Positions 18,040 to 62,785 of a DNA stretch of 64,000 bases are shown here, one piece after another. The first letter of the stretch is position 1; every line of letters begins with the position of its first letter. The stretch is from positions 124,001 through 188,000 of IMG/VR virus record IMGVR_UViG_3300030329_004647. One strand, given 5' to 3'. The translations under genes and the position numbers were made by a program. The notes below the pieces were generated by a model that saw only the letters and a program-made list of their open reading frames with translations, was not told where the DNA came from and did no database searches.

Positions 18040-18041
18040 AA

Positions 18042-20876: not shown

Positions 20877-20877
20877 T

Positions 20878-23752: not shown

Positions 23753-24086
23753 AATTATCCTCTAATCGTACGATATCGTCCTCCCCAAAATACTCACCCC
23801 ATTGAACCTCAATGAAAATCATATCATTACTACTATTATTAATAGGTCTATGCTTATCACCAACAGGAACTAAAATAGTACTACCGACAGTGACCTCAAT
23901 AACTTCATCATTAAGAATAACTTGTCCCGAACCCTGTACTACTGTCCACACTTCATTTCTTTTGTGGTGATATTGGTAACTTGGGGCACCGCCAGGTTTA
24001 ATAACTATTCTTTTAACTTTACAATAATCACAATCTAATAAATTTTCAAAAGTACCCCACGGTCTTTCTTCATTGTAGTTTTTCAT
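23739..24086 (-). CDS. Mannose-6-phosphate isomerase type II cupin (standalone)
   Basis: ERPWG, KVKRIVIKPG, SYQYHHKRNEVW, IEVQWGEYFGEDDIVRLEDNYGR. Confidence 0.88.
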   Translation of the reverse strand: MKNYNEERPWGTFENLLDCDYCKVKRIVIKPGGAPSYQYHHKRNEVWTVVQGSGQVILNDEVIEVTVGSTILVPVGDKHRPINNSSNDMIFIEVQWGEYFGEDDIVRLEDNYGRV

Positions 24087-24451
24087 ATTTTTAAATCTTT
24101 TATACCTTCAGTATTACGTCTTAAATTAACTGCAAAGGCAGTACCAGTCCTACCATCTTCCTTCATGTCGTTTATCAAATATCTTACTCCACCACCAAAA
24201 CCCATGACTAGTTGGTCATAAATTATTCCAGCTTCTGACAATTGTTGTTCAGTTTGTTTTCTAGCGGTATTTCTTCTACCAGTAGTTAAAACAATATGGT
24301 ATCCCTTTTTTTCCCATTCTAAAAGCTTCTCAATGGTTCCAGGGAGAGGTTCCATTTTAGCATTAGGTTTTGTAGCCTCACTAGGTAACATATGTTTAAC
24401 CAATGTACCATCTATATCACAAAATATTGTTTTAGGTCTATTTTCACTCAT
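24083..24451 (-). CDS. Small HAD-superfamily phosphatase
   Basis: FCDIDGTL, LTTGR, INDMK. Confidence 0.8.
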   Translation of the reverse strand: MSENRPKTIFCDIDGTLVKHMLPSEATKPNAKMEPLPGTIEKLLEWEKKGYHIVLTTGRRNTARKQTEQQLSEAGIIYDQLVMGFGGGVRYLINDMKEDGRTGTAFAVNLRRNTEGIKDLKI

Positions 24452-24452
24452 T

Positions 24453-25808: not shown

Positions 25809-25820
25809 TCCTTTTAATTT

Positions 25821-26549
25821 TTATTTATTTATACAATCTTTATATCTTTCTAACGGTAACGCATTTTCTTTTTCTATATCTGCCCAAGAAAAGAAATTAA
25901 AATGTTTATGTTTTTCATCCATCCCAATCCAAAACTCAGCTTGATGTCTGTAGTCAAGTATAAAATTTTCTGGATTGATAATCCAGTCAATCGTAGGTAG
26001 TTTTGAAAGATATTCAGCATTTGCCCACCATATATTTCCAGAGTAGTGAGGCACATAGTCTTCGTATCCATCCCTCATATCTTTATTCCAGTTAGCACCA
26101 CAACTATCGTGGGTTTCTAATTTTTCTATACACTTTAAAAAGTTTTCTATTGAAAAATAAAAATGCATATTTCTTCTATCCATCATTTTTGGGTCATTCC
26201 AGTTCCAAGTGGACACGGATAAAGTTTGTGTGTATAAAACCTTATAATCTTTATTATTATCTACAAAATCTCTAAGTAATCTTAGGGTTGGCAATTCATA
26301 GTCTAATAAATTACCCACTCTAGTTATTTTATAGTTGTCAAAATTAAGTAAATGTTCTGGAAAGGGTAGGTCCCCAACAACATTAAAATGTACATAATCT
26401 ATGTAGTCAAATAAGCCAGATTTATTACCTTTTTCGACTATATCTTTAATTATTCTTTCATAAGTCGTGTTATATGCATGATTATTACCAATTACTGGAG
26501 TTGCAACATGCATAAACATAACCGCTTTATTATTCTTCATATTTATCAT
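25821..26549 (-). CDS. Glycosyltransferase-like hypothetical protein
   Basis: YELPTL, HYSGNIWWANAEY, RHQAEFWIG; type often seen in viral glycan clusters. Confidence 0.4.
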   Translation of the reverse strand: MINMKNNKAVMFMHVATPVIGNNHAYNTTYERIIKDIVEKGNKSGLFDYIDYVHFNVVGDLPFPEHLLNFDNYKITRVGNLLDYELPTLRLLRDFVDNNKDYKVLYTQTLSVSTWNWNDPKMMDRRNMHFYFSIENFLKCIEKLETHDSCGANWNKDMRDGYEDYVPHYSGNIWWANAEYLSKLPTIDWIINPENFILDYRHQAEFWIGMDEKHKHFNFFSWADIEKENALPLERYKDCINK

Positions 26550-26850
26550 TTTTTACACAAGGTGTTTTTACCACAACTGTGGTAACATGAGTTAAACATT
26601 TAAAGTCCGTACTTTCACCTGGTTTTATTACTATTATATCATCCGCCGAATATTCCACCCCATTCATCTCGACCACACCATCAACTATTACAGTAAATTC
26701 CGTAGCCACCTTATGAGTGTGTCTTTTTTCTACAGCACCCTCTAAATACCTTTTAACTGCCACCTCAAAGTCTTGAGTTTTATAAAGGCTAGGTTCAAAG
26801 TCACCCACAAACCAACCCTTAATCATTTCATTTAAATTATGTTTTTCCAT
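26530..26850 (-). CDS. Cupin-fold protein
   Basis: GWFVGDFEPS, HTHKVATEFTVIVDG, VVKTP...DKY. Confidence 0.75.
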   Translation of the reverse strand: MEKHNLNEMIKGWFVGDFEPSLYKTQDFEVAVKRYLEGAVEKRHTHKVATEFTVIVDGVVEMNGVEYSADDIIVIKPGESTDFKCLTHVTTVVVKTPCVKNDKYEE

Positions 26851-28217
26851 TAGTATTTATGATTTTCTAAAAATTTATTTAAATCTTCTGGTGTTCCTAA
26901 TCCCCACATTTTTTTAGTGTGAAACGTCTTTATTTTTTTACCATCCTCTATAGCTTCATTATATATTGGACAAACATAAAATTCATTGTTTATTCTTAAG
27001 TCTTTTTCAATCATTTGTTCACCATATCTTACATAATCAGAACCCTTTGACCAATAGTATATACCCACCGTAGCGATATTACTTATTGGCTTTTTTTCTG
27101 CAACTTCAGATACATACCCATCATTATCTAGTTTAGCAAAACTCCATTTTGGATGAGTTGCGGTAAAAGATAAAATACCACCATCAATTTCATCTGCCAT
27201 CATAGAGTACATAAACTCATTAGAATCCCACTCCACAAACTGGTCAGAGTTTGCTATTAATAAAGGTTCATCATTATTTATAAATTCTTTAGCTAATAAA
27301 GTTGTACATGCTGCACCTTCTGTTACCCCATCAACCTGAACTATTTCACAACCAGGTGTAATAAGGTTTAGTAAGTGTTTTAAGTTATACTTTTCATAGT
27401 GTGATTTTTGAACAATGTATATGTGACGTGCATCAATATTTAAATTTTCAGTCACTACTTGAATCATAGGTTTATTATTAACTTCTATCAGTGGTTTAGG
27501 GAAAGTATACCCAGCTTTTTCAAATCTAGAACCTGCTCCTGCCATAGGGATTAAAACATTCATTTTTCCACCTTGCCACTTAGGTATAATAGCACCGTTA
27601 TTATGTTTGTCTAAATGTTCATTAATTTTTTCGTATGTAACATCTTCACAGTCTTTAACCGCACATAAATGACCTCCACTTTCTACCGCTCCCTTTCTAC
27701 CGTGATGAGAATCCTCAATAATAAGAGTTTGTTTTGGTGACACACCAAAATGTAACATACATTTCATGTACATTTCAGGATGTGGTTTAGGTTTAATAAC
27801 ATCTTGATTCGTGTATAGAACATCTATGTGTTCCATAAACCCTTTTCTAATTAGTTGTAATTTTGCTGTTTCTCTAATTGAATTAGTACAACAAGCTATC
27901 TGATATCCTGAATCTTTTAATCTTCTTAGAATGTCTTTAATTCTAAAATCTTGTGAAAATTTATCTATAATAGATACGGTTTTTTCTTGTTTAAGTTTCC
28001 ATACTATGTTATGAACATCCTTTGATAGTCCTTTTGAGGATGTTAACATTTCTAATTTTTTTGTGGTAGATAACCCATCATATGTAGATAGGTGTTCATC
28101 TCTGGAAATGATAAACTTTTCATCTATGGTTTCTAAAGCTTTATTTAAAGCTTCGTAATGTAATTCTCTAGCGTTTACTAAAACACCATCTAAGTCAAAT
28201 ATAATTAATTTAATCAT
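26850..28217 (-). CDS. Fusion: HAD phosphatase + nucleotidyltransferase
   Basis: FDLDGVL, KPHPEMY, IEDS; then IPMAGAGSRF...PKPLIEV, NSDQ, AEKKPIS, GLGTPEDL. Confidence 0.8.
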   Translation of the reverse strand: MIKLIIFDLDGVLVNARELHYEALNKALETIDEKFIISRDEHLSTYDGLSTTKKLEMLTSSKGLSKDVHNIVWKLKQEKTVSIIDKFSQDFRIKDILRRLKDSGYQIACCTNSIRETAKLQLIRKGFMEHIDVLYTNQDVIKPKPHPEMYMKCMLHFGVSPKQTLIIEDSHHGRKGAVESGGHLCAVKDCEDVTYEKINEHLDKHNNGAIIPKWQGGKMNVLIPMAGAGSRFEKAGYTFPKPLIEVNNKPMIQVVTENLNIDARHIYIVQKSHYEKYNLKHLLNLITPGCEIVQVDGVTEGAACTTLLAKEFINNDEPLLIANSDQFVEWDSNEFMYSMMADEIDGGILSFTATHPKWSFAKLDNDGYVSEVAEKKPISNIATVGIYYWSKGSDYVRYGEQMIEKDLRINNEFYVCPIYNEAIEDGKKIKTFHTKKMWGLGTPEDLNKFLENHKY

Positions 28218-28279
28218 TTTATTTAATTTCTAATTTTATTAGAAAAAATACTAGAATTATTTGGTAAAGTAAACGTTGG

Positions 28280-29197
28280 TTAAATGTTTTGAATGATGTT
28301 CTCAAACAAGTTAATAAGATAATCTAAGTTAATAACATTAGACTGTTTATTGCTAACTATTGGTTCCTTAAAATAACTTTGATATAGCTTATCGTCAGAG
28401 TCTATTTCTAATATTTTTTCTATTAATTCTTCATCACTTTCAAAATCAAAATAATTTAAAAAGCTATTAGGGTTATATTCTTCGTGTATCCTATCATTTC
28501 CCCAGTAAATCGGGATAACACCAGATATAAATGGTTCTATAAATTTTTCACTAATCATACCATTCATACTTACCATTTCTCCATTCTCAATTACCGCGTT
28601 AGGGTAAGAAGGATATGTAGCTCTAAAGTTATTCTCAAAAGCAATATTAAATTTATAATCTTTTATAAAATTTATTTTTGGTAAGGAGGAGTTTAAAGAA
28701 GTATTATCAAAAGGAATGGAAAAGTCTTTGAATGGGTGAACATTAGTTTCTACTTTTTTTACATTATTTAATTTATGAAAAAAACGACCTCTTTTACCGT
28801 GTAAACTTCTACTTACATAAGAACAAAATTTTGTTTTTGGTGGTATAGGTCTATTTTCTTGGGTAAAAAAACTAAAATCCTTTATTAATCCATTTTTTAT
28901 AAATTCATAAACATATTGATAGTAGGCTGGAAATCTTGTGTAATTAGGATAATCTAAAAAAAATCCACCTAAAAAATGGTCAGCAATTTCTGGTGTGGGT
29001 ACTGGAAAATAAGGTTCCCCACCATTAAAATAAATGGTATACACATCAGGAAATGGTCGGTCATTTAAAGAAATTACTAAATTAGGGTTTGAGTCGACCA
29101 CAGTAACATTATGATTTTGACTTAATATCCACACAAAAAAATTATCCTGCTTATTAAAACCACCCCAAAATTCATGAAAATATAATCTAATATCCAT
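28280..29197 (-). CDS. GT10 alpha-1,3/4-fucosyltransferase-like
   Basis: KTKFCSYV, KINFIKDYKFNIAFEN, ISEKF, IPIYWG. Confidence 0.82.
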   Translation of the reverse strand: MDIRLYFHEFWGGFNKQDNFFVWILSQNHNVTVVDSNPNLVISLNDRPFPDVYTIYFNGGEPYFPVPTPEIADHFLGGFFLDYPNYTRFPAYYQYVYEFIKNGLIKDFSFFTQENRPIPPKTKFCSYVSRSLHGKRGRFFHKLNNVKKVETNVHPFKDFSIPFDNTSLNSSLPKINFIKDYKFNIAFENNFRATYPSYPNAVIENGEMVSMNGMISEKFIEPFISGVIPIYWGNDRIHEEYNPNSFLNYFDFESDEELIEKILEIDSDDKLYQSYFKEPIVSNKQSNVINLDYLINLFENIIQNI

Positions 29198-29198
29198 T

Positions 29199-29927
29199 TT
29201 ATTTATCTGTATTTTCTTTAGTAGTTCTAAGGTCTATTTCATATGCGGTACAATCTATATTTTCTTGTCTAGTTAATCTAGGAACAATAGCATAACAAGT
29301 TTCATTTTTTTGTTTAACTACTTCACTAAAAGCTCCGTCTGCTGTGTAATATCCTTCTTTATTAAATTCAGCCATTGTTTTAGCAAAGGATTTTGTTATA
29401 CCAATACTGTGAGTACAGTGTAAGTGAATAAAATTATCTTTTGTTACTTTACATATATTAGAAGAGTGGTTTGGTTGCGGATACATATTTCCGTCCCACC
29501 CTAGGTATACCATGCCCCAGTCATTAGGAAGTTGTGACATGTAATCTTCTACATTTTCAAATTCTGGAAAAAAGATACAATCGTCCTCCAATATTAATAC
29601 CTTCTCCCAATCACCATTAGCTATTTTTTCATACATTTTAACATGGGACAAAGAACATCCTATTTGTCCAAAAGATAGATTTTGTGGCATTACCCTAACT
29701 ATACCATTCGTGTCTGTATGTAAATTAGTAAAACCAGCTTTAGAACCATCTATACCATAAAACAACTCATAATCTAATCCATCCAACCTATCTTTTATTC
29801 TTTGTATTCTTGATTTAGCAGTTGGTGCTAAATTAGCATTAGCCACAAAATCAGATTCATTAAAATCATGTTCTAGTGTTAACACTAAAACTTTATCGAA
29901 TAATTTATTTAATATACTTAAATCCAT
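29199..29927 (-). CDS. GT25 glycosyltransferase
   Basis: GIDG, GQIGCSLSH, LILEDD, DWGMVYLG. Confidence 0.82.
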   Translation of the reverse strand: MDLSILNKLFDKVLVLTLEHDFNESDFVANANLAPTAKSRIQRIKDRLDGLDYELFYGIDGSKAGFTNLHTDTNGIVRVMPQNLSFGQIGCSLSHVKMYEKIANGDWEKVLILEDDCIFFPEFENVEDYMSQLPNDWGMVYLGWDGNMYPQPNHSSNICKVTKDNFIHLHCTHSIGITKSFAKTMAEFNKEGYYTADGAFSEVVKQKNETCYAIVPRLTRQENIDCTAYEIDLRTTKENTDK

Positions 29928-30595
29928 GTTTTTATATAGTTTTTAGTTTCATCACTCATTTCATTAAAAGCTCTATCTTTAAATTTTAAAAGTGAAACTG
30001 AGGATTCAGGGTTCATATAGAATGTGTATTTTTCCCTAACTTGTTTGGACCAAACAACATCTTCGGATTCTCCCCACATTCTATTTTCATCTAAAGGAAA
30101 TTCTTTCATTATATGTTTTTTACATACCCAGTAAGCTCCTGAAATATACATCCACTTAGTAAACTCAGTAAAGTCATAAGGAAGAAGAAATTCTTTATTT
30201 TTCACACCTAAAGGTTCCACATCAAAAGCCCATAAAGTCCAATCTCTATATCGACTACCATCTCTATTTAAAATTTTAGTCATACAAACATCAAAATCGT
30301 TTCCAAATTTTAAAAAGCCATCATACCAATTCTTAGATAAAAATACATAATCGTGTAAGTAAACAATGTTATCAAACTTAGCTTCATTAGTGATGATATT
30401 CTTTTTTTTAGTAATCCACATTGGTCTTTGAGTCTCATCAAATGGAATAACCCGAGTATTTTCCGCTTTAACATTACTATTACCAACTACAATAATTTCA
30501 AAATTAGGGATATTTTGTGATAATATAGAATTTATAACTATTTCTACAAAATCATCCGAAGAACCGTTTGTTATTATTCCAAAAGTAAAATCCAT
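29918..30595 (-). CDS. GT2-like glycosyltransferase
   Basis: FTFGIIT, KKKN, VYLHDY, WGESEDVVWS. Confidence 0.65.
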   Translation of the reverse strand: MDFTFGIITNGSSDDFVEIVINSILSQNIPNFEIIVVGNSNVKAENTRVIPFDETQRPMWITKKKNIITNEAKFDNIVYLHDYVFLSKNWYDGFLKFGNDFDVCMTKILNRDGSRYRDWTLWAFDVEPLGVKNKEFLLPYDFTEFTKWMYISGAYWVCKKHIMKEFPLDENRMWGESEDVVWSKQVREKYTFYMNPESSVSLLKFKDRAFNEMSDETKNYIKTWI

Positions 30596-30597
30596 AA

Positions 30598-31410
30598 TTA
30601 AAAGTAGTTTGTGTAGTTTTTAAAAATCCAATCTTCAGCGAGAATAAATTCCTTTGATTTATCTAAATTATTCTTAATAGCTTCCATTCTATTAATATAA
30701 TCTTCTTCTGTTAAATTATCTAAAATATTTTTTAACTCTTCCACAGTTTCAAAAAATATTATTCCATTTTCGTCAAAAAAGTTTTTAACAGAGTGGGTTC
30801 CCCAATATATTGGTATGGTTCCAGTAGCGAAACAATCTATTATTTTTTCCGTAAAATAATCATCATACTTTATATTTTCTACTACTACTGAAAATCTGTA
30901 TTTAGACAACCCATCTATTTTGAACTCTAAATCATTAATTCCTCTTCCATAAACATCTATATTATTACCCATTTCTTTAATAATAGAATGCCTTAATTTG
31001 TGACCAGTAGTTGTTTGTTTATTTGAAGCTATGATAGAACATAGAGAAGACTTAGGCCATATTTTTATATCTTTATCGTCAATCCAACACCCAGCGTGAG
31101 GATACCATTTAAATTTTTCAGGGTCACTTTCTATTAGTTCTTGGGAATAGGTAAATATTACATCATATCTATCTTTGACAGTTTTAACCGACTCATACCC
31201 TCTTGGATTTATAGATGGAGGTTCTATCAACCAACCTATATTTTTTTTGTATGGTGAACTTAATACGTGTGTAATTAAGTAGTCAGTAAAAAAACAAATT
31301 TCGGATTCATAATCTTCCCTAATCCACTCAAAGTAAGAGGGTTTTCTTCCATGACAAGAAGATTCACCATGAGCGAAACACATGTCTTTTATTAGTATTT
31401 TTTTATTCAT
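30598..31410 (-). CDS. GT10-like glycosyltransferase
   Basis: YRFSVVVEN, YFTEKIIDCFATGTIPIYWG. Confidence 0.75.
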   Translation of the reverse strand: MNKKILIKDMCFAHGESSCHGRKPSYFEWIREDYESEICFFTDYLITHVLSSPYKKNIGWLIEPPSINPRGYESVKTVKDRYDVIFTYSQELIESDPEKFKWYPHAGCWIDDKDIKIWPKSSLCSIIASNKQTTTGHKLRHSIIKEMGNNIDVYGRGINDLEFKIDGLSKYRFSVVVENIKYDDYFTEKIIDCFATGTIPIYWGTHSVKNFFDENGIIFFETVEELKNILDNLTEEDYINRMEAIKNNLDKSKEFILAEDWIFKNYTNYF

Positions 31411-32204
31411 TTTAAAATAAATTTAATTTCTTGATGAGGACCATTAACGTCAGTAAAATCCATATTAACAAAATCTAGTCTTTTTCCATTAATATATTCC
31501 CTCACTAATTCTTTTTCACTGTAACTTATTTTTTTACCATAAGGATTGTTAAAAACGTCGTTAACTTTATTAACAGGAATACTAACCAACTTACTCTCTT
31601 CGAATGAATGCATAAATCTTTCACCAATTATAGGTAAAAAATGCTGTAAATTAGCTTCTAGTGTGTTGGGTGATGTAAAGGGACACCTTTCTAATATTTT
31701 TAGTATAAATTCTTTTTTAAATATATGGCCATCAACAGATAGTGGATAGGCAAAATCAACTTCATTTTCATCCCATCTCCATTTTAAAACACCATTGTTA
31801 TTACTTACATTTTTAGTTTCATAACTTTTAGAAGCGGGATGAGAATAGTTACAATTTAATCCTAGTCTTAGGGAAAAACAGGCTGCGTCATCATCTATAT
31901 TAATTTTATTAAACTGAAGTGTTTTAAAAATAACACTATCATCTGTCATGAAAGAAAATAACTTAAATTTTTGTTTTCTAACAAACGATAATACTTGATT
32001 GTAAAAATCCTCTTCTTCTATATTAAAATTAACATCTGGATGTTCTTTTATGAGTGTCTTGTACGCGGATTCATAATGAGGTGCTGTTGTTTTATATATA
32101 ATATTTATGTTAAAAAAATTGGGCATATTAAGATATATAGAGTTTAACAACCCATCTAATTGTAATGGTCTATTTTTAGAAAATATAACTAATTCACACC
32201 TCAT
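31407..32204 (-). CDS. GT-A-like putative glycosyltransferase
   Basis: IFSKNRPLQL, FMTDD, FSLRLG, YPLSVDGHIF. Confidence 0.5.
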   Translation of the reverse strand: MRCELVIFSKNRPLQLDGLLNSIYLNMPNFFNINIIYKTTAPHYESAYKTLIKEHPDVNFNIEEEDFYNQVLSFVRKQKFKLFSFMTDDSVIFKTLQFNKINIDDDAACFSLRLGLNCNYSHPASKSYETKNVSNNNGVLKWRWDENEVDFAYPLSVDGHIFKKEFILKILERCPFTSPNTLEANLQHFLPIIGERFMHSFEESKLVSIPVNKVNDVFNNPYGKKISYSEKELVREYINGKRLDFVNMDFTDVNGPHQEIKFILK

Positions 32205-32815
32205 TTTAATAAATTATCATAGTTTACAACTCTTCCTTGTATATCTGAATAACCTTCTCTTTGAAAAGCAATAGAGGGGTTAGTACAATATACATTAAAA
32301 CTTTTTTGAATCATTGTATAGTAGTTATCTACTTGTTTTTTATGTTTAGGTAATATGCTTTCTATTACGTCATACACCGTTGATTTTACAGCGACACAAT
32401 GAATCGCTACTGTATAGTGTAATTTTAATGTTGTCTCATTTATAACTTGGGGTGGTGAACCGTATCTATGATTACCACCAAAATAAATCATATCCCAATC
32501 ATCGGGAATGTTATTCATAAATTTATCTAAATTTTTTAATTCAGGCCCAAAAACCACATCATCCTCCAACATTAGATAATGGGGTAAATTATTTTCTTTA
32601 GCGTGACGCACTAAAGATAAGTTACTCTCCAATATACCTAATTCTCCTGGGAGTATAAATTTAGGTTTTTCTAACTTACTACCATCTACAGCTGAAAATC
32701 GTTCAACATCTTTTAATCCCACTCTATCAAACTCTGAACAAGCTTCTTCCCACCTATCCTTTCTTTGGTCCAAATTAATACAAAATATGTCTTTAAAATA
32801 TTTGTTAAAACTCAT
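32201..32815 (-). CDS. GT25 glycosyltransferase
   Basis: CINLDQRKDRW, RFSAVDG, GELG, MLEDD, DWDMIYFG, QREGYSDI. Confidence 0.85.
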   Translation of the reverse strand: MSFNKYFKDIFCINLDQRKDRWEEACSEFDRVGLKDVERFSAVDGSKLEKPKFILPGELGILESNLSLVRHAKENNLPHYLMLEDDVVFGPELKNLDKFMNNIPDDWDMIYFGGNHRYGSPPQVINETTLKLHYTVAIHCVAVKSTVYDVIESILPKHKKQVDNYYTMIQKSFNVYCTNPSIAFQREGYSDIQGRVVNYDNLLK

Positions 32816-34464
32816 AATAGTTCTTCGTATGTTTTTATAATTTCATTTATTGTGTATGTCGAACGGAATTTTTCCATATCTCCAGGTACCTCATTATATG
32901 TTATATCTAGAATATTACCACTTTCATCGACATTGTAAATCCATCCTGGTCTATTACATAGCCAACCCTCGATAGTTGTTCTACCTAATAATATACCAGC
33001 CGTCTCATGACACTCCTTTATATAGTTTTCTACAGACCAAGTAGGTTCAAAATATTTAACATGTGGTTCATTAATTTTATCTAAATAGTCCGCTCTCTTT
33101 TTACCCACAATCCATAATTCTTTATTGTCAGATTTAGTTTTCTCAATTAAATCTTCTATAGTCAATTGTCTTAACCAATCTATAGTACCCACGAATAAAA
33201 TTCTAGGCTTTATATTTTTTTGTAATGGATAGTGTTTAAATCTTGTTTCATCAAAAGGATTATAAATGGTAACCGTTTTATCCTCTGAGATGTTAAACCT
33301 ATCTTCGATATATTTTTTAATTTCAGGACGAATACATATATATTTTTTAATTCTTTCATCTAATACCGGTTGTTCTAATTCTAAAACTTCAGAATGTATG
33401 GTACAGAGTATAGATGATGCTTGGGGATATAGATTTAACATTCCTTCTGTTATTGGTTTGTGATGTAAGTGAAGAACGTCAAACTTAACATCTTTTACTT
33501 TATAAAGCTGTCCCTCTACTGTTTGTATTTGTCCTTGAGCTGTGTTAAGCACTGTTTTACCATCTCCTTTAAAAAATCCTGGAGGTTCATTTATAGACCA
33601 TAATGTTACACCATAGGTTTTTATTTTTTTAGATATACTACCTCCTATATTTGAACAGATGTGTACGTCATGTCCCTCTTGAGCTAAACCTTTAGCTAGC
33701 TCGTAAACATGTAACTCAGAACCCGTATAATCGTTAAAATTTAAACAAGCTATTAATATCTTTAGTTTTTCACCTTTCCATAATTTACGATTCATAAAAA
33801 CAGGTAAATTGGTAGAATACTTCTCAACGAACAATTGTCTAGCCTCTTCCCATTTATCATTAGTAGCACCAATTGAAAGGTGTGTAATTTTAATATTAGA
33901 GTGTACCCCTATTTTAACACCATCCATATAATTAGGAAAACAAAACCCCACATCATAAAAGTGAAAATTGGTAAAACTCTCATCAAACTTATGTTTTATA
34001 CTATTTTTTTTAATAGAGAAAAATAATCCGTCTACTAATACAACGTCATCAATTCTATTTCCTATATCTTTAGAATATCTACTTAACCATCTTTTACCTT
34101 CATGTTCGTGATAAACAGCACCATGCATTTTTGAAAAGTCATCCCACCATCGTCCACTAGAAGGCATATATCTCGTTCCCGCTACACCTAAAATTCCATA
34201 GTCTTTATTTTTTTTATGATGATTTAAAACCCTTCTACCCCAATTACGAGTATCAAACTTTATGTCGTCATGACAAAATACCACAATATCGTTTGTGGCT
34301 TTAGAAAGTCCGATGTTAAAAGCTTCAGATAATGAATATTTGCCATCGTTTTCTATAGGAATAACTTCTACCTTGTGTACACCACAAGTTGATTTTATTA
34401 GTTCTACAAAGTAGGGGTCTACTTTTTTTGTAGAAAACACTACTGATAAATTTTTAAAGTTCAT
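32812..34464 (-). CDS. Bifunctional glycosyltransferase (GT-A Glyco_tranf_2_5-like + GT-B)
   Basis: N-terminal FCHDDI, GVAG, VDGLF, FHFYD; C-terminal TGSELHVYELAKGL, IYNPFD, GRTTIEGW. Confidence 0.75.
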   Translation of the reverse strand: MNFKNLSVVFSTKKVDPYFVELIKSTCGVHKVEVIPIENDGKYSLSEAFNIGLSKATNDIVVFCHDDIKFDTRNWGRRVLNHHKKNKDYGILGVAGTRYMPSSGRWWDDFSKMHGAVYHEHEGKRWLSRYSKDIGNRIDDVVLVDGLFFSIKKNSIKHKFDESFTNFHFYDVGFCFPNYMDGVKIGVHSNIKITHLSIGATNDKWEEARQLFVEKYSTNLPVFMNRKLWKGEKLKILIACLNFNDYTGSELHVYELAKGLAQEGHDVHICSNIGGSISKKIKTYGVTLWSINEPPGFFKGDGKTVLNTAQGQIQTVEGQLYKVKDVKFDVLHLHHKPITEGMLNLYPQASSILCTIHSEVLELEQPVLDERIKKYICIRPEIKKYIEDRFNISEDKTVTIYNPFDETRFKHYPLQKNIKPRILFVGTIDWLRQLTIEDLIEKTKSDNKELWIVGKKRADYLDKINEPHVKYFEPTWSVENYIKECHETAGILLGRTTIEGWLCNRPGWIYNVDESGNILDITYNEVPGDMEKFRSTYTINEIIKTYEELL

Positions 34465-35449
34465 ATTTTTTTATATAGTATTTTATAGTTTCGTTAATAC
34501 TGTCCTCAAAAGAGTAAACAGGCCACCAACCTAAATCCGTTGTAATTTTATCATGATTAATTGAGTATCTAAAATCATGCCCCGCTCTATCCTTTACAAA
34601 ACTTATTAAATTTTGGGAGTCAACATTACCCGTGAGTTCATCGAAATTTTTACACATAAAAGTGATTAAATCTATGTTCGATAGTTCCATGTCACCCCCT
34701 ATATTATATTTTTGTCCTGAAGTTCCATTATGAAAGACACTATCTAATGCTCTACAATGGTCATCCACATACAACCAATCTCTTATATTTTTACCATCAC
34801 CATAAACAGGTATTTCTGTTCTATTATAAAGATTTTTTATAACGGTTGGTATTAGTTTTTCTTCATGTTGTCTAGGACCAAAATTATTAGAACAATTAGT
34901 CATAACAACATCCAAACCAAAAGTATGAAAATATGATAGTACAAAGTGGTCAGATGACGCTTTAGACGCGGAATAAGGTGACCTAGGAAGGTATAATGAG
35001 TTTTCATGTGAAGATGGTGAATCCATGTCTAATGACCCATAAACCTCATCAGTAGAAATATGTAAAAATCTTTTAGTTTTATATTTTAAAGCTAAGTTTA
35101 ATAAATTTAATGTCCCTATAACATTAGTTTCCGCGAATATAGTAGGATTTTCAATAGAATTGTCTACATGACTTTCAGCTGCTAGATGAAAAATTCCATG
35201 AGGATTAAACTCTTTGAAGATTTCCTCAAGTTTACTTTTATCCCTAATATCACATTTTACAAAATGGTAATTAGGATGATTCTCAACATCATTTAAATTA
35301 TTTAAATCAGCAGCATAAGTTATAGAATCTACATTTACGATTAAATAATCTTTATACTTTTCAAGAAGGTGAATTATTAAATTAGAACCGATGAATCCCA
35401 ATCCTCCAGTCACTAATATAATCTTATTATTATTTAATGGTATTAACAT
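34454..35449 (-). CDS. rmlB: dTDP-glucose 4,6-dehydratase
   Basis: TGGLGFIGSN, HLAAESHVDNSI, STDEVYG, PYSASKA, NNFGPRQHEEKLIP, DRAGHDFRY. Confidence 0.93.
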   Translation of the reverse strand: MLIPLNNNKIILVTGGLGFIGSNLIIHLLEKYKDYLIVNVDSITYAADLNNLNDVENHPNYHFVKCDIRDKSKLEEIFKEFNPHGIFHLAAESHVDNSIENPTIFAETNVIGTLNLLNLALKYKTKRFLHISTDEVYGSLDMDSPSSHENSLYLPRSPYSASKASSDHFVLSYFHTFGLDVVMTNCSNNFGPRQHEEKLIPTVIKNLYNRTEIPVYGDGKNIRDWLYVDDHCRALDSVFHNGTSGQKYNIGGDMELSNIDLITFMCKNFDELTGNVDSQNLISFVKDRAGHDFRYSINHDKITTDLGWWPVYSFEDSINETIKYYIKKYEL

Positions 35450-56855: not shown

Positions 56856-59800
56856 ATGGCTAACGGTAATAATAGAGTATTCGTATCTCCAGGGGTATAC
56901 ACCTCGGAAAAAGATTTAAGTTTTGTAGCACAGAGTGTTGGTGTTACAACATTAGGTTTGGTCGGAGAGACCAAAAAAGGGCCAGCTTTTGAACCAATCT
57001 TTGTAAGTAATTATAGTGACTTTACAACTAGATTTGGTAGTACATCAGCTGACAAATTTGTTGATACACAAATTCCTAAACACGAATTAGCATTTATAGC
57101 AAAATCTTACTTATCACAATCAAATCAATTGTTTGTGACAAGAGTATTAGGATTAAATGGTTATGATGCAGGACCATCTTGGTCAATAACAACAATCGGT
57201 GAAGTAGACCCACTATACGTTTCTGCTGCAACATCAGCTCAAACAACGAGTAACTGGAGTGACATTATTTACATTCCAATGACCTCAACTACCGCTACGC
57301 CAGACGGAATATATTTAACATATAACTCTGCGACAGGAAAGTTTAGTGACCCTATCACTGATATGACAACATTTGGGGGTGCCAATTTCCCAATTCAAAA
57401 TTACCAACTAACAGGCCAAACATTTATTAATGGGTATGGAACTACTTTAGGTACTTTTATTGATGAAATAACCTCTTTTGTTAACACAGTAAATGGTGGG
57501 GACAATATGTCTTGGGATGGTTCAGGACTAAGTCAATACTGGTATTATGGTGTATTAGGTACAGGAACAACTGTTGGTGGTGAAGGAGCAAATAGTTTTT
57601 GTGAACATTACGCTAACACGTGGATGACAGGTAATACATCAGGATTATCCATTCAAGCAATAGACCATGAAAATAGATTAGCTGTTGACGCTTCAAACTT
57701 CTATGATGACCAAAATGATGGTTGGTATGACACTTTATTCGAGTATGAATATGGTGAAGGTGCTAACTGTTACTGTACTTCTTATTCAGGTTCTTCATTT
57801 GATATGTTTGGTTATTCAGCTTTAACAGCTCAAACATATATAGATGAAGTTGACTTAAGTACTAGTGGAGCAAGTACATTCTTTGCTGGTGGACAATTTA
57901 ATAATGACCCAACATCAGGAGGAACAAGTACAGAATGGTCAGGAGCTACAGGAGTAAATGGAACAGGTGGACAAGCTGTAATATCGTTTACGGCTACTAG
58001 TAGTGGTGGTCCAGAAACTTGGGCATACAGAATTGGTTCAACATCAGCTAACGCAACAGGTGTAGTAGCTAATGTATGGAGTTCCCTATACCAAACACCA
58101 GTGGGAACATATGATAGTATAGGACCTGTAACGACACATCCTTATGTACCATCTGATTTTGACGAGGTATTATCAGGAGGAACAGCATCCACAACAACAG
58201 TATTAAAGAGTAATCCATATCCAGTACCATTAACGCCATTCGATTTCGCGAAGAGTGGTACAACTTGTGATACTAGTATAGGAGCTTACTCAGCTGTTTC
58301 AGTAATTTATAGTGGATTTGCTAATATTGGTAGTTTAGTAGGTGGTAACTTAGGTGGAGCAGGAACTGGATTCGACCAAGGTAATCTATCTTCAGGTATT
58401 TCACATACCTTTGTTGGTTTCTCTGGAGCTGACGGACCAAACTCATATTCTGGGACACTTGCTGTTAATATGGTATTCTATAGTGCTGATTGTCAATCAC
58501 AAAATCTGTTAACATTACAATTAAGTGGTTGTGCAGCTGAATATCAAAATGTAAGTGCAGACACTGAATATCACAACTTAGTAGTGGCAACAATGAGAGC
58601 TAGAGGACAAAGTTCACTTTCTACAGGAGGACCAGTCTATACAATTAGTGGTTCATCATCATCCTCAACAGGAGCTTACGGTGATGTAACATTTAATTGT
58701 TTAGGAGCTTACCAACCAATAGTTGATGACCCATTCTTTAATTTTGGTATAAGTGCTAGAACGGATGGTGGAGCAACATATAACTTTGATGTGAGCATGA
58801 ATACATCATCTAAAAATTACCTACCAAAAGTATTAGGTAGAAATGTATTTGATAAAAAAATGGAGGAAGTTCCTATTTTTGTTGAGGAAGTTTACCCTAA
58901 TATCCTAAAATATGGATTTAATAGAAATAGAATTAGAGGCCTAAACTGTTGTTTATTAAAATTACCAGCAGCAAGATGGAACAATACAGGTATGGATTCT
59001 ATAGGTTGGTACATGCAACAATGGCAAACACCAGAAACACCTTACGTAGTTTCAGAATTACGAGGTGAGGATGTATATAGACTATTTAAATTTGTTTCTA
59101 TTTCAGACGGTACAGAAGCAAATAGAGAATATAAAGTATCAATTATAAACATTTCATTTGAAAGATTAGAGTTTGATGTATTAGTTAGAGATTTCTATGA
59201 TAGTGACGCTAGTCCTGTTGTTTATGAAAAATTCACAAGATGTAGTTTAGACCCATCATTACCTTCTTTTATAGGAAGAAAAATAGGTACTTCAGATGGT
59301 CAATACGAATTAAGGTCTAAATACACAATGTTATATTTAACTGAAGAGGTTTTAGATGGAACACTTAAAGACGCTGTTCCAGCAGGTTTTGATTACTACG
59401 ATTTTAGAAATTATGAAAACGGTGCTGGTAAAACGTGTAGAGCTATTCCACCGATGTTAAAATATAAAACAAAATACTTTACGGCTGGAGAAGTAGTTTA
59501 TGACCCACCTTATGATAACGCTGACGGAAGTGCTAACTCTTATATATCACCAGGTGACAATGTGAGAAAAACATATTTAGGTATTTCTGACACAGTAGGT
59601 GCAGCTATAGATTTTGATTTCTTCGAGTATAAAGGTAAGAAAACACCAGTATCGGTTTGTACAGATGTTAATGGTGTAAGTTGGGGAACAATCAGAAAAG
59701 GTTTCCATATGGATTCAGGAGCTACAATAATTGTTGCGGGTTCTGGAACGTATATAACACAATCGGGTACAACTCTTAGTGGTGACTCTATCTTTGAGGT

Positions 59801-60941
59801 GGGAGCAGCAGACTTTAGAGGTGAACCAGCATCAAGTAATCACCCATACAAAAAACTAAATTCTCGTAAATTTACTTTAGCACCTTATGGTGGTTTTGAT
59901 GGATGGGATGAATACCGTAAGTTTAGAAGTAATGGTGATTCCTATAGACTTGGACTACAAGGATTCTTAAATGGAGCGTGTAATGACGCGGTTTACCCGT
60001 CAGCTGTAGGAGACGGTTCATTTAAAGCTCTAAGTAGTACTGAAGCAAATACGGATTATTTTGCATACCTTAGAGGTGTACAAACATTCCAAAACCCAGA
60101 AGCGGTTAATATTAATGTATTTGCTACACCAGGTATTGACTACGTTAACAACCAATCTCTAGTTAAAGAATCTATAGATATGGTAGAAAGTCAAAGAGCT
60201 GACTCGTTATATATTACGACAACACCTGACTTTAACATGTACGTACCAACATCTTCAGATGTGACAAATCAAATATCACCAACAGAAGCTGGAGATAATT
60301 TAGAGGACTCACTAATAGATTCTAACTATACGGCAACGTATTATCCATGGATTTTGGTTAGAGATGACAATAGTAATAAACAAATCTATATACCACCAAC
60401 ATCAGAGGTTACTAGAAACTTAGCATTAACTGATAATGTAGCATTCCCTTGGTTCGCTTCAGCAGGTTATACACGTGGTTTAGTAAACGCACAAAGAGCT
60501 AGAAGAAAACTGACTCAGGACGAAAGAGATACGTTATATGTTGATAGAATTAACCCAATAGCGACATTCTCAGATGTAGGACCAATTATTTTTGGACAGA
60601 AAACTCTACAAATTAAAGAGTCTGCTCTTGACAGAATTAATGTTAGAAGATTATTATTACAAACAAGAAAACTAATTTCCGCGGTAGCTGTTAGACTACT
60701 ATTCGAACAAAATGATGATGTAGTAAGACAACAATTCTTAGACCTAGTTAACCCTATATTAGATTCTATTAGAAGAGATAGAGGTTTAACAGACTTTAGA
60801 GTTGTACTTTCTAACGACCCAGAAGAAATTGATAGAAATGAATTAAATGGTAAGATTTACTTAAAACCTACAAGAGCGTTAGAGTTTATCTTCATAGAAT
60901 TCTTGATAACACCAACTGGAGCAGAATTTGAATCAGTTTAA
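56856..60941 (+). CDS. Contractile tail sheath protein (gp18-like) with large insertion
   Basis: VSPGVYTSEKDLS, GETKKGPAFEP, WFASAGYTRG, RINPI, GQKTLQ, LDRINVRRLL, IYLKPTRALEFI. Confidence 0.92.
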   Translation: MANGNNRVFVSPGVYTSEKDLSFVAQSVGVTTLGLVGETKKGPAFEPIFVSNYSDFTTRFGSTSADKFVDTQIPKHELAFIAKSYLSQSNQLFVTRVLGLNGYDAGPSWSITTIGEVDPLYVSAATSAQTTSNWSDIIYIPMTSTTATPDGIYLTYNSATGKFSDPITDMTTFGGANFPIQNYQLTGQTFINGYGTTLGTFIDEITSFVNTVNGGDNMSWDGSGLSQYWYYGVLGTGTTVGGEGANSFCEHYANTWMTGNTSGLSIQAIDHENRLAVDASNFYDDQNDGWYDTLFEYEYGEGANCYCTSYSGSSFDMFGYSALTAQTYIDEVDLSTSGASTFFAGGQFNNDPTSGGTSTEWSGATGVNGTGGQAVISFTATSSGGPETWAYRIGSTSANATGVVANVWSSLYQTPVGTYDSIGPVTTHPYVPSDFDEVLSGGTASTTTVLKSNPYPVPLTPFDFAKSGTTCDTSIGAYSAVSVIYSGFANIGSLVGGNLGGAGTGFDQGNLSSGISHTFVGFSGADGPNSYSGTLAVNMVFYSADCQSQNLLTLQLSGCAAEYQNVSADTEYHNLVVATMRARGQSSLSTGGPVYTISGSSSSSTGAYGDVTFNCLGAYQPIVDDPFFNFGISARTDGGATYNFDVSMNTSSKNYLPKVLGRNVFDKKMEEVPIFVEEVYPNILKYGFNRNRIRGLNCCLLKLPAARWNNTGMDSIGWYMQQWQTPETPYVVSELRGEDVYRLFKFVSISDGTEANREYKVSIINISFERLEFDVLVRDFYDSDASPVVYEKFTRCSLDPSLPSFIGRKIGTSDGQYELRSKYTMLYLTEEVLDGTLKDAVPAGFDYYDFRNYENGAGKTCRAIPPMLKYKTKYFTAGEVVYDPPYDNADGSANSYISPGDNVRKTYLGISDTVGAAIDFDFFEYKGKKTPVSVCTDVNGVSWGTIRKGFHMDSGATIIVAGSGTYITQSGTTLSGDSIFEVGAADFRGEPASSNHPYKKLNSRKFTLAPYGGFDGWDEYRKFRSNGDSYRLGLQGFLNGACNDAVYPSAVGDGSFKALSSTEANTDYFAYLRGVQTFQNPEAVNINVFATPGIDYVNNQSLVKESIDMVESQRADSLYITTTPDFNMYVPTSSDVTNQISPTEAGDNLEDSLIDSNYTATYYPWILVRDDNSNKQIYIPPTSEVTRNLALTDNVAFPWFASAGYTRGLVNAQRARRKLTQDERDTLYVDRINPIATFSDVGPIIFGQKTLQIKESALDRINVRRLLLQTRKLISAVAVRLLFEQNDDVVRQQFLDLVNPILDSIRRDRGLTDFRVVLSNDPEEIDRNELNGKIYLKPTRALEFIFIEFLITPTGAEFESV

Positions 60942-62296: not shown

Positions 62297-62785
62297 ATGG
62301 CTGATTTATTAATGAAAATGCCCGTTCCTTATGAACCGAAAAGAAAGAATCGGTTTATTTTGAGATTTGATTCTTCACTGGGTTTAAACGAGTGGTACGT
62401 TGAAAGTACATCAAGACCACAAGTAACAATAAATTCTGTAGAAATACCTTTCCTAAACACATCTACTTATGTGGCAGGAAGATTTACATGGAATACTGTT
62501 AATGTAACATTCAGAGACCCAATCGGTCCTTCAGCAGCACAAGCGTTGATGGAGTGGGTTAGACTACACGCTGAGTCAGTTACTGGTAGAATGGGATATG
62601 CTGCGGGATATAAGAAAAATATCGATTTAGAATTATTAGACCCTACAGGAGTTGTTGTAGAAAAATGGGTAATGCAAGGTGTATTTTTAACAGATGTTAA
62701 TTTTAATGACTTATCTTATAGTGATGACGGACTATCTAACATTTCTGCTACACTAAGACCAGACAGATGTATATTAGTTTACTAA
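62297..62785 (+). CDS. Tail tube protein (gp19-like)
   Basis: YEPKRKNRF, YVAGRFTW, TFRDPI, MEWVR, LLDPTGVVVEKW; TATTTATA at 62254-62261. Confidence 0.88.
   Translation: MADLLMKMPVPYEPKRKNRFILRFDSSLGLNEWYVESTSRPQVTINSVEIPFLNTSTYVAGRFTWNTVNVTFRDPIGPSAAQALMEWVRLHAESVTGRMGYAAGYKKNIDLELLDPTGVVVEKWVMQGVFLTDVNFNDLSYSDDGLSNISATLRPDRCILVY

What the first reader, a model, noticed from the sequence alone, without database searches (positions are those of the whole stretch)
57200..58570. Tail sheath roughly doubled in size by an S/T/G/C-rich insertion
Seen: the sheath is 1361 aa. About 450 aa between the conserved N-terminal block (VTRVLG) and VVATMRARG are low-charge, S/T/G-rich and full of [ST][GA]xT motifs. 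Known: T4-like sheaths are about 650-750 aa and insertions project outward. Inference: an outward-facing, possibly glycan-bearing coat repeated along the whole tail.
Basis: partly seen in the sequence, partly recalled or inferred. Interest (0 to 1): 0.6.

Follow-up and report, generated by a model that had tools for sequence, protein, structure and literature searches.

The report
Giant phage tail sheath, swappable cassette
A marine jumbo phage has an unusually large (1361-residue) tail sheath protein because a fast-evolving, exchangeable 476-residue surface cassette without known relatives sits at the point where sheath proteins send domains outward; what the cassette does, including whether it carries sugars, is untested.

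Summary
Window 56856-60941 (+) encodes a 1361-aa T4-type tail sheath in a 232-kb marine phage contig. An 824-aa sheath from another huge phage matches residues 9-103 and 580-1358 and lacks everything between. The insert is therefore residues 104-579 (window 57165-58592), at one site.

The insert is 38% S/T/G, with only 5 K+R in 475 residues. It is acidic rather than uncharged, and it is not Cys-rich. The [ST][GA]xT motif is about 4-fold enriched over shuffles, here and across the family.

The insert explains about two thirds of the excess over T4 gp18. The rest is a family-conserved module at residues 586-1065.

The cassette has two parts. One is a confidently modelled alpha/beta domain (about 105-335 plus 535-585). 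Nested in it is a roughly 190-aa module (about 340-528) found only in the longest relatives. No sequence or fold relative of the cassette was found outside this sheath family.

The cassette is under purifying selection (dN/dS 0.05-0.32, against 0.02-0.09 in the core) and has been exchanged by recombination. It is not an intein, a repeat array or a DGR target.

Outward exposure is inferred from T4 gp18 topology. Glycan-bearing is untested: a 26-kb glycan gene cluster lies in the window, but no protein-glycosyltransferase signature was found.

The parts
56856..60941 (+). Tail sheath gene, 1361 aa (P0001)
   Evidence: ORF list and translation. T4 gp18 homology at E 2.9e-31. PF17482. phrog_23, tail sheath. 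The N-terminus matches the family consensus.
56856..57164 (+). Conserved N-terminal block, aa 1-103 (sheath N-arm and first part of the core), ending in FVTRVLGLNGY
   Evidence: About 80% identity across the family. Aligns to residues 5-88 of the 824-aa insert-less sheath. Aligns weakly to T4 gp18 residues 3-60.
57165..58592 (+). S/T/G-rich, almost free of K and R, acidic
   Evidence: Absent from the LR756508.1 sheath. Composition. About 33% identity against 70% in the core. dN/dS 0.05-0.32. Recombination breakpoints at query positions about 122 and 571.
57168..57860 (+). Cassette domain A, first part (aa about 105-335): mixed alpha/beta domain
   Evidence: AlphaFold2 pLDDT mostly 84-96. Present, though divergent, in all family members. 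No PDB, BFVD or ESM-Atlas fold match.
57873..58439 (+). Cassette module B (aa about 340-528): nested extra module found only in the 1333-1375-aa class
   Evidence: P0007 (1112 aa) aligns to query 5-339 and 529-1361 and lacks this piece. AF2 pLDDT 28-49, so it is unmodelled. Conserved anchors W..EWS, GTGST and AYTAV.V.LSGF. A profile search of 1.84 billion proteins found only 3 hits, apparently sheath fragments by their lengths and match positions. dN/dS 0.36 in L010/L011.
58458..58610 (+). Return strands of domain A (aa about 535-585), including VVATMRARG
   Evidence: AF2 shows confident long strands pairing with residues about 310-332. T579, R581, R583 and G584 are invariant in the family.
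58611..60050 (+). Family-conserved extra module (aa 586-1065), shared with the insert-less 824-aa sheath
   Evidence: About 50-80% identity in the family. Aligned at 28% identity to LR756508.1. AF2 is mostly confident. Residues about 719-1013 match the surface domain of other sheaths: 9ezm_A Z 8.5, rmsd 3.5, 111 aligned; phiCD508 Z 7.5. From about aa 1010 it is homologous to gp18 residue 301 onward.
60051..60941 (+). gp18-type C-terminal core (aa 1066-1361) plus stop codon
   Evidence: phmmer to T4 gp18 residues 360-653. PF17482 and a weak PF04984 match. More than 90% identity across the family at 1251-1350. VIA match of 1256-1360 to the sheath/gp25-like C-terminal fold.
62297..62785 (+). Tail tube gene (context: the partner on which the sheath assembles)
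   Evidence: phrog_4542, tail tube protein, 5.4e-31.
9632..35449 (-). Phage-borne sugar-nucleotide synthesis and glycosyltransferase cluster (context for the glycan hypothesis; its acceptor is unknown)
   Evidence: Pfam hits: GT2, GT1-like, UDP-Glc/GDP-Man dehydrogenase, three epimerase/dehydratases, two DegT aminotransferases, two GDP-mannose 4,6-dehydratase-family proteins (1e-120 and 5e-84), a HAD-nucleotidyltransferase fusion, two GT10, two GT25 and a GT2_5+GT4 fusion.

Best explanation
The segment is a lineage-specific decoration cassette of folded domains, inserted at a single site in a T4-type tail sheath protein.

Chain order:
- The chain leaves the conserved N-terminal block after the strand FVTRVLG.
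- It builds an alpha/beta domain (A).
- From a long hairpin of A it makes a second, nested module (B, about 190 aa).
- It returns through the strands ending in VVATMRARG.
- It continues into the conserved outer module and the gp18-type core that polymerises around the tube.

Because every sheath subunit carries the cassette, it should form the outermost layer along the whole tail. That layer would be acidic, almost free of Lys and Arg, and rich in Ser, Thr, Gly and aromatic residues. The cassette is dispensable for the contractile core, since a natural homologue lacks it. It is kept by purifying selection, diverges three to four times faster than the core in amino-acid sequence, varies from about 170 to 480 residues, and is swapped between related phages by recombination.

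Shown: the boundaries, the nesting, the composition, the selection regime, the exchange, and the absence of detectable relatives outside this sheath family.

Inferred: the outward position and the function.

My split for function is:
- Weak multivalent adhesion to host-envelope or particle polysaccharide, in the manner of Hoc and Ig-like decorations: about 0.3.
- Acceptor for phage-made glycans: about 0.2.
- Passive shielding or bracing of the sheath surface: about 0.3.
- Something else: about 0.2.

The confidence figure refers to the 'exposed, exchangeable, folded decoration cassette' statement, not to any one function.
For: Identity as a sheath. The tail tube gene lies 1.4 kb downstream.

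Single-site insertion: the 824-aa homologue aligns to 9-103 and 580-1358 only.

Nesting: P0007 lacks residues 340-528. AF2 shows a long hairpin (model 215-237 and 451-474) flanking the unmodelled piece.

Folded and selected:
- pLDDT is about 90 for domain A.
- dN/dS is 0.05-0.32 in 16 pairs, and 0.32 (A) and 0.36 (B) in L010/L011.
- W, Y and G anchors are conserved in module B.
- Aromatic content is 13.6%.

Fast and variable: cassette identity about 33% against about 70% in the core. Lengths run from 169 to 479 aa.

Composition conserved despite divergence: S+T+G 32-48% and K+R 0-3% in all cassettes measured.

Exchange: in L035 against L042, third-codon-position identity is about 0.9 in the flanks and 0.47-0.68 inside query positions 122-571. 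dS is 1.11 inside against 0.15 in the core.

Not hypervariable within a strain: contigs from independent 2025 seawater metagenomes cover the cassette with 0-1 differences per kb.

Exposure: the T4 gp18 nested-domain map, with its protruding Domain I (PMC3004832), and the finding that extra domains lie away from the tube in surveyed sheaths (PMC9230969).
Against: No assembly model or map shows where the cassette sits. The N-terminal correspondence with gp18 rests on weak alignments: conditional E 1.8e-4, and not significant.

Module B was not modelled (pLDDT 28-49), so 'folded' rests on selection and conservation patterns for that part.

The dS values near or above 1 are close to saturation, and alignment error in the cassette could inflate both dN and dS. 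The clean case for recombination is one pair, L035/L042.

Every function listed is inference from composition and analogy.
Confidence: 0.75

Rival explanations
1. Glycan-bearing coat. Ser and Thr residues of the cassette are O-glycosylated in the cytoplasm by the phage's own glycosyltransferases, so the tail is sheathed in sugar. The model is flagellin central domains, or the capsid and tail-tube glycosylation of mycobacteriophages.
For: A 26-kb cluster carries at least 8 glycosyltransferase-family ORFs and pathways for deoxy and amino sugars. GT2 matches occur in 3 of 3 relatives' long records, and GDP-mannose dehydratase in 2 of 3. No initiating phosphoglycosyltransferase or Wzx flippase was found in the phage record, which fits a soluble acceptor. 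The cassette has 24% Ser+Thr, and the [ST][GA]xT motif is enriched 3.8-fold across 70 family cassettes. Seven other ORFs in the genome carry similar K/R-poor, S/T/G-rich stretches. Virion glycosylation is known in mycobacteriophages, as summarised in PMC12619734.
Against: No Maf/MptE-like or GT41-like protein glycosyltransferase was found. Known sequons are not enriched, with ratios of 0.82 and 0.72. Forty per cent of the motif occurrences sit in five conserved alignment columns, as a structural turn would. The cluster could instead act on DNA: Mom-like, dUTPase and dCTP-deaminase-like genes lie nearby. It could also act on the host envelope. The record is estimated to be only 72% complete, so the absences are weak evidence.
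Confidence: 0.2
2. Adhesin layer. The cassette is a carbohydrate- or envelope-binding domain that gives the tail many weak contacts with host surface polysaccharide or marine particles. Cassette swapping would then track host surface diversity.
For: The composition is aromatic-rich (13.6% F+Y+W), S/T/N/G-rich and low in charge, which from general knowledge is typical of sugar-binding beta domains and phage receptor-binding tips. The sharp recombination boundaries and length classes resemble host-range modules. An adhesion role has been proposed for extra sheath domains (PMC9230969). A tail-spike-like protein (L001) shares the composition.
Against: There is no match to any lectin, CBM or Ig-like family or fold. 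The cassette is under net purifying selection, not dN/dS above 1. Sheath surfaces are not known receptor-binding sites in model phages.
Confidence: 0.3
3. Passive structural role. The cassette only braces neighbouring subunits, or shields the conserved sheath surface from proteases or fouling. Its variability would then reflect weak constraint rather than interaction with a partner.
For: dN/dS is raised but stays below 1, as expected for relaxed constraint. Stabilising contacts by extra domains have been proposed for phage 812 (PMC9230969).
Against: A three-fold range in length and wholesale cassette replacement are hard to reconcile with precise bracing contacts. The strict maintenance of composition and of the motif across cassettes at 30% identity argues for active selection on surface properties.
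Confidence: 0.3
4. The segment is an intein, a diversity-generating-retroelement target, a tandem-repeat array, or an assembly or annotation artefact.
For: None beyond the unusual size and the low-complexity look of the sequence.
Against: No Hint, intein or endonuclease domain was found at E up to 0.1. The segment is present at variable size in every relative. Self-BLAST finds no internal repeat. The genome has no reverse transcriptase and no second copy of the cassette DNA. The same sequence was recovered with 0-2 differences in independent metagenomes from 2014 and 2025. An identical 1361-aa protein is on record from 3 contigs.
Confidence: 0.02

Closest known systems
Bacteriophage T4 gp18 tail sheath (659 aa; PDB 3FOA, 3J2M, 9MKB)
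   Same: The C-terminal roughly 350 residues are homologous (E 2.9e-31; profile E 2.4e-38), and the N-terminal arm matches weakly. The design is the same: outer domains are nested insertions between N- and C-terminal parts that form the inner layer (PMC3004832). The gene lies next to the tail tube gene.
   Different: T4 has about 258 residues (Domains I and II) between the conserved blocks; this protein has about 960. No similarity of the cassette to gp18 Domains I or II was detected by sequence or by Foldseek.
Multi-domain ('type 3') sheaths of jumbo and huge phages: LacPavin_0818_WC45 (1283 aa), Mad1_20_16 (1248 aa), Agrobacterium phage Atu_ph07 (1086 aa)
   Same: These are very large sheaths with five or more domains added to the conserved core, and size correlates with genome size (PMC9230969). 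The present phage contig is 232 kb.
   Different: At 1361 aa this protein is longer than any in that survey. The extra domains described there are mostly Ig-like beta-sandwiches, and no Ig-like match was found here. Homology to those particular proteins was not tested.
The 824-aa sheath of uncultured huge phage LR756508.1 (484 kb)
   Same: It is collinear with this protein over the N block, the conserved outer module and the core, at 28-37% identity. It is the best match in the phage collection.
   Different: It lacks the whole cassette, so it serves as the natural 'before insertion' state.
Flagellin hypervariable central domains (D2/D3). This is an analogy recalled from general knowledge and was not tested here.
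   Same: A filament subunit whose conserved termini polymerise, with a central insertion that is surface-exposed, variable in length, exchanged between strains and, in many bacteria, O-glycosylated on Ser/Thr without a strict sequon.
   Different: The protein, the fold and the assembly are unrelated. No flagellin-type glycosyltransferase (Maf) was found.
Virion glycosylation in mycobacteriophages (Freeman et al. 2023, as cited in PMC12619734)
   Same: Phage-encoded glycosyltransferases and a structural protein as the proposed acceptor.
   Different: In those phages the glycans sit on C-terminal extensions of the capsid and tail-tube subunits, not on a sheath insertion. Here there is no biochemical evidence at all.

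Membership tests
Contractile tail sheath, T4 gp18 type (PF17482 + PF04984; PHROG 23) | C-terminal sheath domain (PF17482) | tested here: met
   PF17482 at residues 1256-1349, 30.3 bits against a cut-off of 26.9. VIA match of 1256-1360 to sheath and gp25-like C-terminal folds, Z 9.2 for 6od1_B and 5.4-6.4 for the sheath chains listed.
Contractile tail sheath, T4 gp18 type (PF17482 + PF04984; PHROG 23) | Subtilisin-like sheath domain (PF04984; gp18 Domain III, C-terminal part) | tested here: inconclusive
   Pfam gives 16.8 bits, below the cut-off of 31.4. However, direct homology to T4 gp18 residues 360-653 is E 2.9e-31, and the family profile reaches gp18 residue 301 at E 2.4e-38. Many relatives carry a precomputed PF04984 hit.
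Contractile tail sheath, T4 gp18 type (PF17482 + PF04984; PHROG 23) | Conserved N-terminal arm that pairs with the C-terminal domain | tested here: inconclusive
   Residues 9-66 align to gp18 3-60 at only 5.2 bits. The block is about 80% conserved in the family and 37% identical to the LR756508.1 sheath.
Contractile tail sheath, T4 gp18 type (PF17482 + PF04984; PHROG 23) | Encoded beside the tail tube gene | tested here: met
   The tail tube gene (phrog_4542, 5.4e-31) is at 62297-62785, with the sheath gene ending at 60941.
Contractile tail sheath, T4 gp18 type (PF17482 + PF04984; PHROG 23) | Forms a six-start helical sheath that contracts | not testable with these tools
   This needs virions or in vitro assembly.
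Type 3 multi-domain sheath (Evseev et al. 2022) | [quoted passage not shown] | tested here: met
   Domains A and B, the 586-1065 module and the core were resolved by alignment and by AF2.
Intein | Hint splicing domain, with or without a homing endonuclease, excised from a conserved host protein | tested here: not met
   No such Pfam family at E up to 0.1. The segment is variable, always present, and has its own conserved fold elements.
Ig-like, FN3 or BIG decoration domain (Hoc-like; common in sheath extra domains) | Beta-sandwich fold recognisable by Pfam or by fold search | tested here: not met
   No Pfam hit. Foldseek against PDB and BFVD gave E of 0.086 or worse. VIA best Z 4.3 (3fc7_B, rmsd 3.1, 81 aligned). 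Atlas TM 0.30 or less. Module B was not modelled, so it is untested by fold.
DGR variable protein | Reverse transcriptase plus a template repeat nearly identical to the variable region | tested here: not met
   No PF00078 match in the genome. The cassette DNA matches only itself. There is no within-strain variation in independent metagenomes.
Glycosylated filament or virion protein | Glycosyltransferase and sugar-nucleotide genes in the same genome | tested here: met
   The 26-kb cluster at 9632-35449. Relatives carry similar genes.
Glycosylated filament or virion protein | A recognisable protein-directed glycosyltransferase (Maf/MptE-like, GT41 or NGT) | tested here: not met
   PF01973 and PF13844 are absent from the phage record. 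Seven ORFs in the cluster have no family assignment.
Glycosylated filament or virion protein | Glycan detected on the protein | not testable with these tools
   This needs mass spectrometry or glycan staining of virions or of co-expressed protein.

The most novel reading that the evidence does not exclude
The cassette, together with the other K/R-poor, S/T/G-rich virion proteins of this phage, is the acceptor for the oligosaccharides made by the 26-kb phage glycan cluster. A widespread group of marine jumbo phages would then carry a sugar-coated contractile tail, with the [ST][GA]xT motif as the acceptor site. This would be a phage counterpart of flagellin glycosylation or of giant-virus fibril glycosylation.
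Probability: 0.2. Interest if true: 0.75.

Novelty: new variant of a known kind. Interest (0 to 1): 0.45.

Why it matters
Sheath proteins enlarged by outward domains are already a recognised pattern in large phages, so the size alone is not a surprise.

What is new is the behaviour of this insert. It is a discrete cassette with no detectable relatives. It obeys a strict compositional rule: almost no Lys or Arg, and about 40% Ser, Thr and Gly. It carries an enriched short motif. It comes in nested length classes. It has been replaced by recombination between otherwise near-identical sheath genes.

The family is abundant in sea water. There were 5941 word-search hits and at least 575 IMG/VR loci, so whatever the cassette does is done on a very large scale.

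The cassette gives a concrete, testable handle on an open question: what the extra domains on phage tails are for. Because the same genomes carry large glycan-synthesis clusters, it is also a good place to ask whether marine phages glycosylate their virions.

Tried and rejected
Intein: rejected. There is no Hint or endonuclease domain, and the segment is variable but always present.

Internal repeats: none found by self-BLAST.

DGR or contingency hypervariation: rejected.

Cys-rich: rejected.

Word search restricted to residues 121-575: it returned only the protein itself. The 8000-candidate limit applied, probably filled by compositionally similar proteins. This result is uninformative, not evidence of absence.

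ESM-Atlas feature search of 121-575: only unnamed clusters at 0.92, giving no lead.

Fold searches of the cassette model: Foldseek against PDB (best E 3.6), Foldseek against BFVD (best E 0.086), VIA wide (best Z 4.3, PAS-like, not above background) and Atlas by shape (TM 0.30 or less) gave no credible match. Half of that model is low-confidence, and the domains were not folded separately, so this does not prove a new fold.

AF2 of residues 560-1361: the conserved core (1065-1287) came out at pLDDT 22-45. The likely reasons are that the N-terminal arm was missing and the alignment is only 60-70% diverse. That model was used only for residues 570-1015 and for the C-terminal domain.

Searches of the phage record for Maf-like, GT41, Bac_transf and Wzx families were all negative. 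The record is estimated to be 72% complete.

Similarity between the two cassette boundaries (RVLGLSGY.DAGPSW against RSRG.ST..SGGPVY): hhalign P 0.038, too weak to claim a duplication.

The moraphage paper (PMC12619734) was read as a possible description of this lineage. Nothing ties this contig to that group, so no claim is made.

The Freeman 2023 paper on virion glycosylation is not held in the library.
Full report
**What is there**

Window 56856-60941 (+) is one ORF of 1361 aa, stored as P0001. The window is part of a single 232,028-bp virus contig at about 32% G+C, which CheckV estimates to be 72% complete.

The protein is a T4-type contractile tail sheath:
- phmmer against PDB sequences matches T4 gp18 at E 2.9e-31 over residues 1076-1360, equivalent to gp18 360-653. 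There is a weak N-terminal match of 9-66 to gp18 3-60.
- Pfam finds PF17482 above its cut-off and PF04984 below it.
- PHROGs gives phrog_23, tail sheath, at 7.7e-54.
- A tail tube gene follows at 62297-62785.

Nothing in Pfam matches residues 100-1065 at E up to 0.1.

**Checking the observation**

Residues 101-575 are 37.7% S+T+G. They hold five K+R (1.0%) and 8.8% D+E, so the segment is acidic rather than uncharged. Cys is 1.3%, the same as in the next 490 residues, so the segment is not Cys-rich.

The [ST][GA]xT motif occurs 13 times against 3.0 +/- 1.65 in 5000 shuffles. Self-BLAST finds no internal repeats.

**Is it an insertion, and where exactly?**

The best match in the phage collection is an unannotated 484-kb uncultured phage, LR756508.1. 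Its sheath ORF is 824 aa. Its residues 5-88 align to query 9-103, and its residues 80-822 align to query 580-1358. Query 104-579 has no counterpart. The cassette is therefore residues 104-579 (window 57165-58592), inserted at one site.

Compared with T4 gp18 (659 aa), the roughly 700 extra residues have two sources. One is this 476-aa cassette. The other is a larger conserved outer module at 586-1065, which the insert-less homologue also has.

**The family**

A word search returned 5941 significant hits. The listed ones are 1018-1375 aa, mostly from marine metagenomes (ENA, JGI, Tara), on contigs of up to 424 kb. IMG/VR holds at least 575 loci.

The N block and residues 576-1361 are conserved, at 50-95% identity to the query by window. 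Residues 121-575 fall to 1-34% by window and are of variable length. Three length classes exist, with cassettes of about 170-190, 230-310 and 430-480 aa.

In the 28 full-length relatives, the cassette is about 33% identical to the query against about 70% for the rest of the protein.

P0007 (1112 aa) matches query 5-339 and 529-1361. Residues 340-528 are therefore a further nested module (B), present only in the longest class.

**Structure**

AlphaFold2 on residues 95-600, with 86 aligned relatives, gave three results:
- A confident mixed alpha/beta domain for residues about 105-335, with pLDDT mostly 84-96.
- Confident long strands at about 540-585 that pair with residues about 310-332.
- pLDDT of 28-49 for residues about 336-534, which is module B.

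Module B nevertheless has conserved anchors, namely W..EWS, GTGST and AYTAV.V.LSGF.

Fold searches with this model found nothing credible:
- Foldseek against PDB: best E 3.6.
- Foldseek against BFVD: best E 0.086.
- VIA wide: best Z 4.3, 3fc7_B, rmsd 3.1, 81 aligned, within background.
- ESM Atlas by shape: TM 0.30 or less.

A profile of module B, searched with HMMER against 1.84 billion representatives, found three proteins. By their lengths and match positions they look like fragments of the same sheath family.

The second model, residues 560-1361, was confident for 570-1015 but poor for the core. VIA matched residues about 719-1013 to the surface domain of other sheaths: 9ezm_A at Z 8.5, rmsd 3.5, 111 aligned, and phiCD508 at Z 7.5. 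It matched 1256-1360 to the sheath C-terminal fold.

A family profile extends the homology with gp18 back to gp18 residue 301.

**Evolution**

Nei-Gojobori estimates on 16 close pairs of IMG/VR genes give dN/dS of 0.02-0.09 for the core and 0.05-0.32 for the cassette. In the long-class pair L010/L011, domain A is 0.32, module B is 0.36 and the core is 0.05-0.10. The cassette is therefore constrained, but less so than the core.

In L035 against L042, the core is 98.9% identical in protein with dS 0.15, while the cassette has dS 1.11. Third-position identity falls from about 0.9 to 0.47-0.68 exactly within query positions 122-571. That pattern indicates replacement of the cassette by recombination.

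Across all cassettes measured, S+T+G stays at 32-48% and K+R at 0-3%, whatever the length or sequence.

The [ST][GA]xT motif is enriched 3.8-fold across 70 family cassettes (482 observed against 127 expected), and 91% of them have z above 2. The N-x-S/T and D-[ST]-[AILVMT] motifs are not enriched. About 40% of motif occurrences sit in five conserved columns, and the rest are spread over 84 columns.

**Not a hypermutation target or an artefact**

The genome has no reverse transcriptase and no second copy of the cassette DNA. The same strain turns up in marine metagenomes from 2014 and, in other studies, from 2025. Contigs from three 2025 runs cover the cassette with 0-1 differences per kb. Contigs of related phages pile up only on the conserved C-terminal part.

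**Orientation**

In T4 gp18, Domain I (98-188) is inserted in Domain II (88-97 and 189-345). Domain II is inserted in Domain III, which lies between the termini that form the inner Domain IV. Domains I and II are solvent-exposed, and Domain I protrudes outward (PMC3004832).

The cassette here leaves the chain right after the strand FVTRVLG. That strand aligns, weakly, with the end of the N-terminal part of Domain III in T4-like sheaths. In a survey of 112 sheaths (321-1283 aa), the additional domains lie away from the tube (PMC9230969).

Outward exposure is therefore the expected arrangement, but it was not modelled here.

**The glycan question**

Window 9632-35449 (- strand) is a 26-kb cluster of sugar-nucleotide enzymes and at least eight glycosyltransferase-family ORFs. 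All three relatives whose long records could be searched carry GT2 matches, and two carry GDP-mannose dehydratase.

The phage record has no match to Bac_transf or Wzx. That fits a soluble acceptor, but only weakly. It also has no Maf-like or GT41-like protein glycosyltransferase.

Seven other ORFs in the genome have long K/R-poor, S/T/G-rich stretches. One of them is tail-spike-like.

The acceptor could equally be DNA or the host envelope. I put sheath glycosylation at about 0.2.

**Verdict**

This is a real, well-bounded insertion. It is best described as an exposed, folded, exchangeable decoration cassette in a type-3 multi-domain sheath.

The kind is known. The cassette itself has no detectable relatives, and its compositional rule, nesting and recombinational exchange are new details. 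Its function is open, and my split among the candidate functions is given under Best explanation.

Noticed in passing
window 9632-35449 (- strand): A 26-kb phage-borne glycan cluster. It holds GT2, GT1-like, two GT10 (fucosyltransferase-like), two GT25, a GT2_5+GT4 fusion, UDP-Glc/GDP-Man dehydrogenase, epimerase/dehydratases, two DegT aminotransferases, two GDP-mannose 4,6-dehydratase-family proteins and a HAD-nucleotidyltransferase fusion. A PhoH gene sits inside it, and seven ORFs have no family. Its acceptor is unknown.
   Followed up: partly
window 43884-44765 (+); genome G000:C1 20387-23572, 26046-29417, 108582-109220, 194913-201023, 211928-215434, 218135-220756: Seven other ORFs have stretches of 150 aa or more with K+R at 3% or less and S+T+G at 33% or more. 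Two large proteins are K/R-poor throughout (1123 aa with 1.5% K+R; 873 aa with 1.1%). One ORF (L001) matches tail-spike and virion structural PHROGs. The 2036-aa ORF ends in a metallopeptidase/endolysin-like domain.
   Followed up: partly
window 57138-57188 and 58587-58640 (aa about 95-111 and 578-595): The two cassette boundaries resemble each other: RVLGLSGY.DAGPSW against RSRG.ST..SGGPVY. BLAST aligned both to the same strand of the insert-less homologue. hhalign gives P 0.038 over 17 columns, which is too weak to call a duplication or a recombination handle.
   Followed up: partly
window 62819-63445 (- strand): An ORF matching the Mom-like DNA modification protein PHROG (4.7e-37), and more weakly HNH and homing-endonuclease PHROGs, lies directly after the tail tube gene on the opposite strand.
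   Followed up: no
window 60963-61247 and 61366-62226 (+): Two ORFs (94 aa and 286 aa) lie between the sheath and tube genes. The 286-aa one has only a weak hit to a PHROG of unknown function. In T4 the sheath and tube genes are adjacent.
   Followed up: no
window 56500-61300 (read laying): The same strain, with 0-2 differences per contig piece, occurs in seawater metagenomes from several independent studies in 2014 and 2025. A marine metatranscriptome run holds contigs at 59376-59793 with 0-1 differences, which hints at transcription, although DNA carry-over is not excluded. Summed contig depth peaks about 20-fold at 60525-60685, where contigs of many related phages align.
   Followed up: partly
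window 8924-9625 (- strand); 35453-36825 (- strand): A weak Sigma-70 region 2 match (E 2.3e-4, below the cut-off) flanks one end of the glycan cluster. A dUTPase/dCTP-deaminase-like gene and a PolB-type exonuclease gene flank the other end.
   Followed up: no
L085 (IMGVR_UViG_3300031857_024884, 203 kb): IMG/VR classes this relative's record as a provirus, while the others are classed as linear. If that is correct, some members of this jumbo-phage group may integrate. This was not examined.
   Followed up: no
P0001 residues 1065-1287 (window 60048-60716): The most conserved part of the protein was the worst modelled by AlphaFold2 (pLDDT 22-45) when folded without the N-terminal arm and with a 60-70% identical alignment. 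High conservation with shallow diversity can therefore give a poor model.
   Followed up: no
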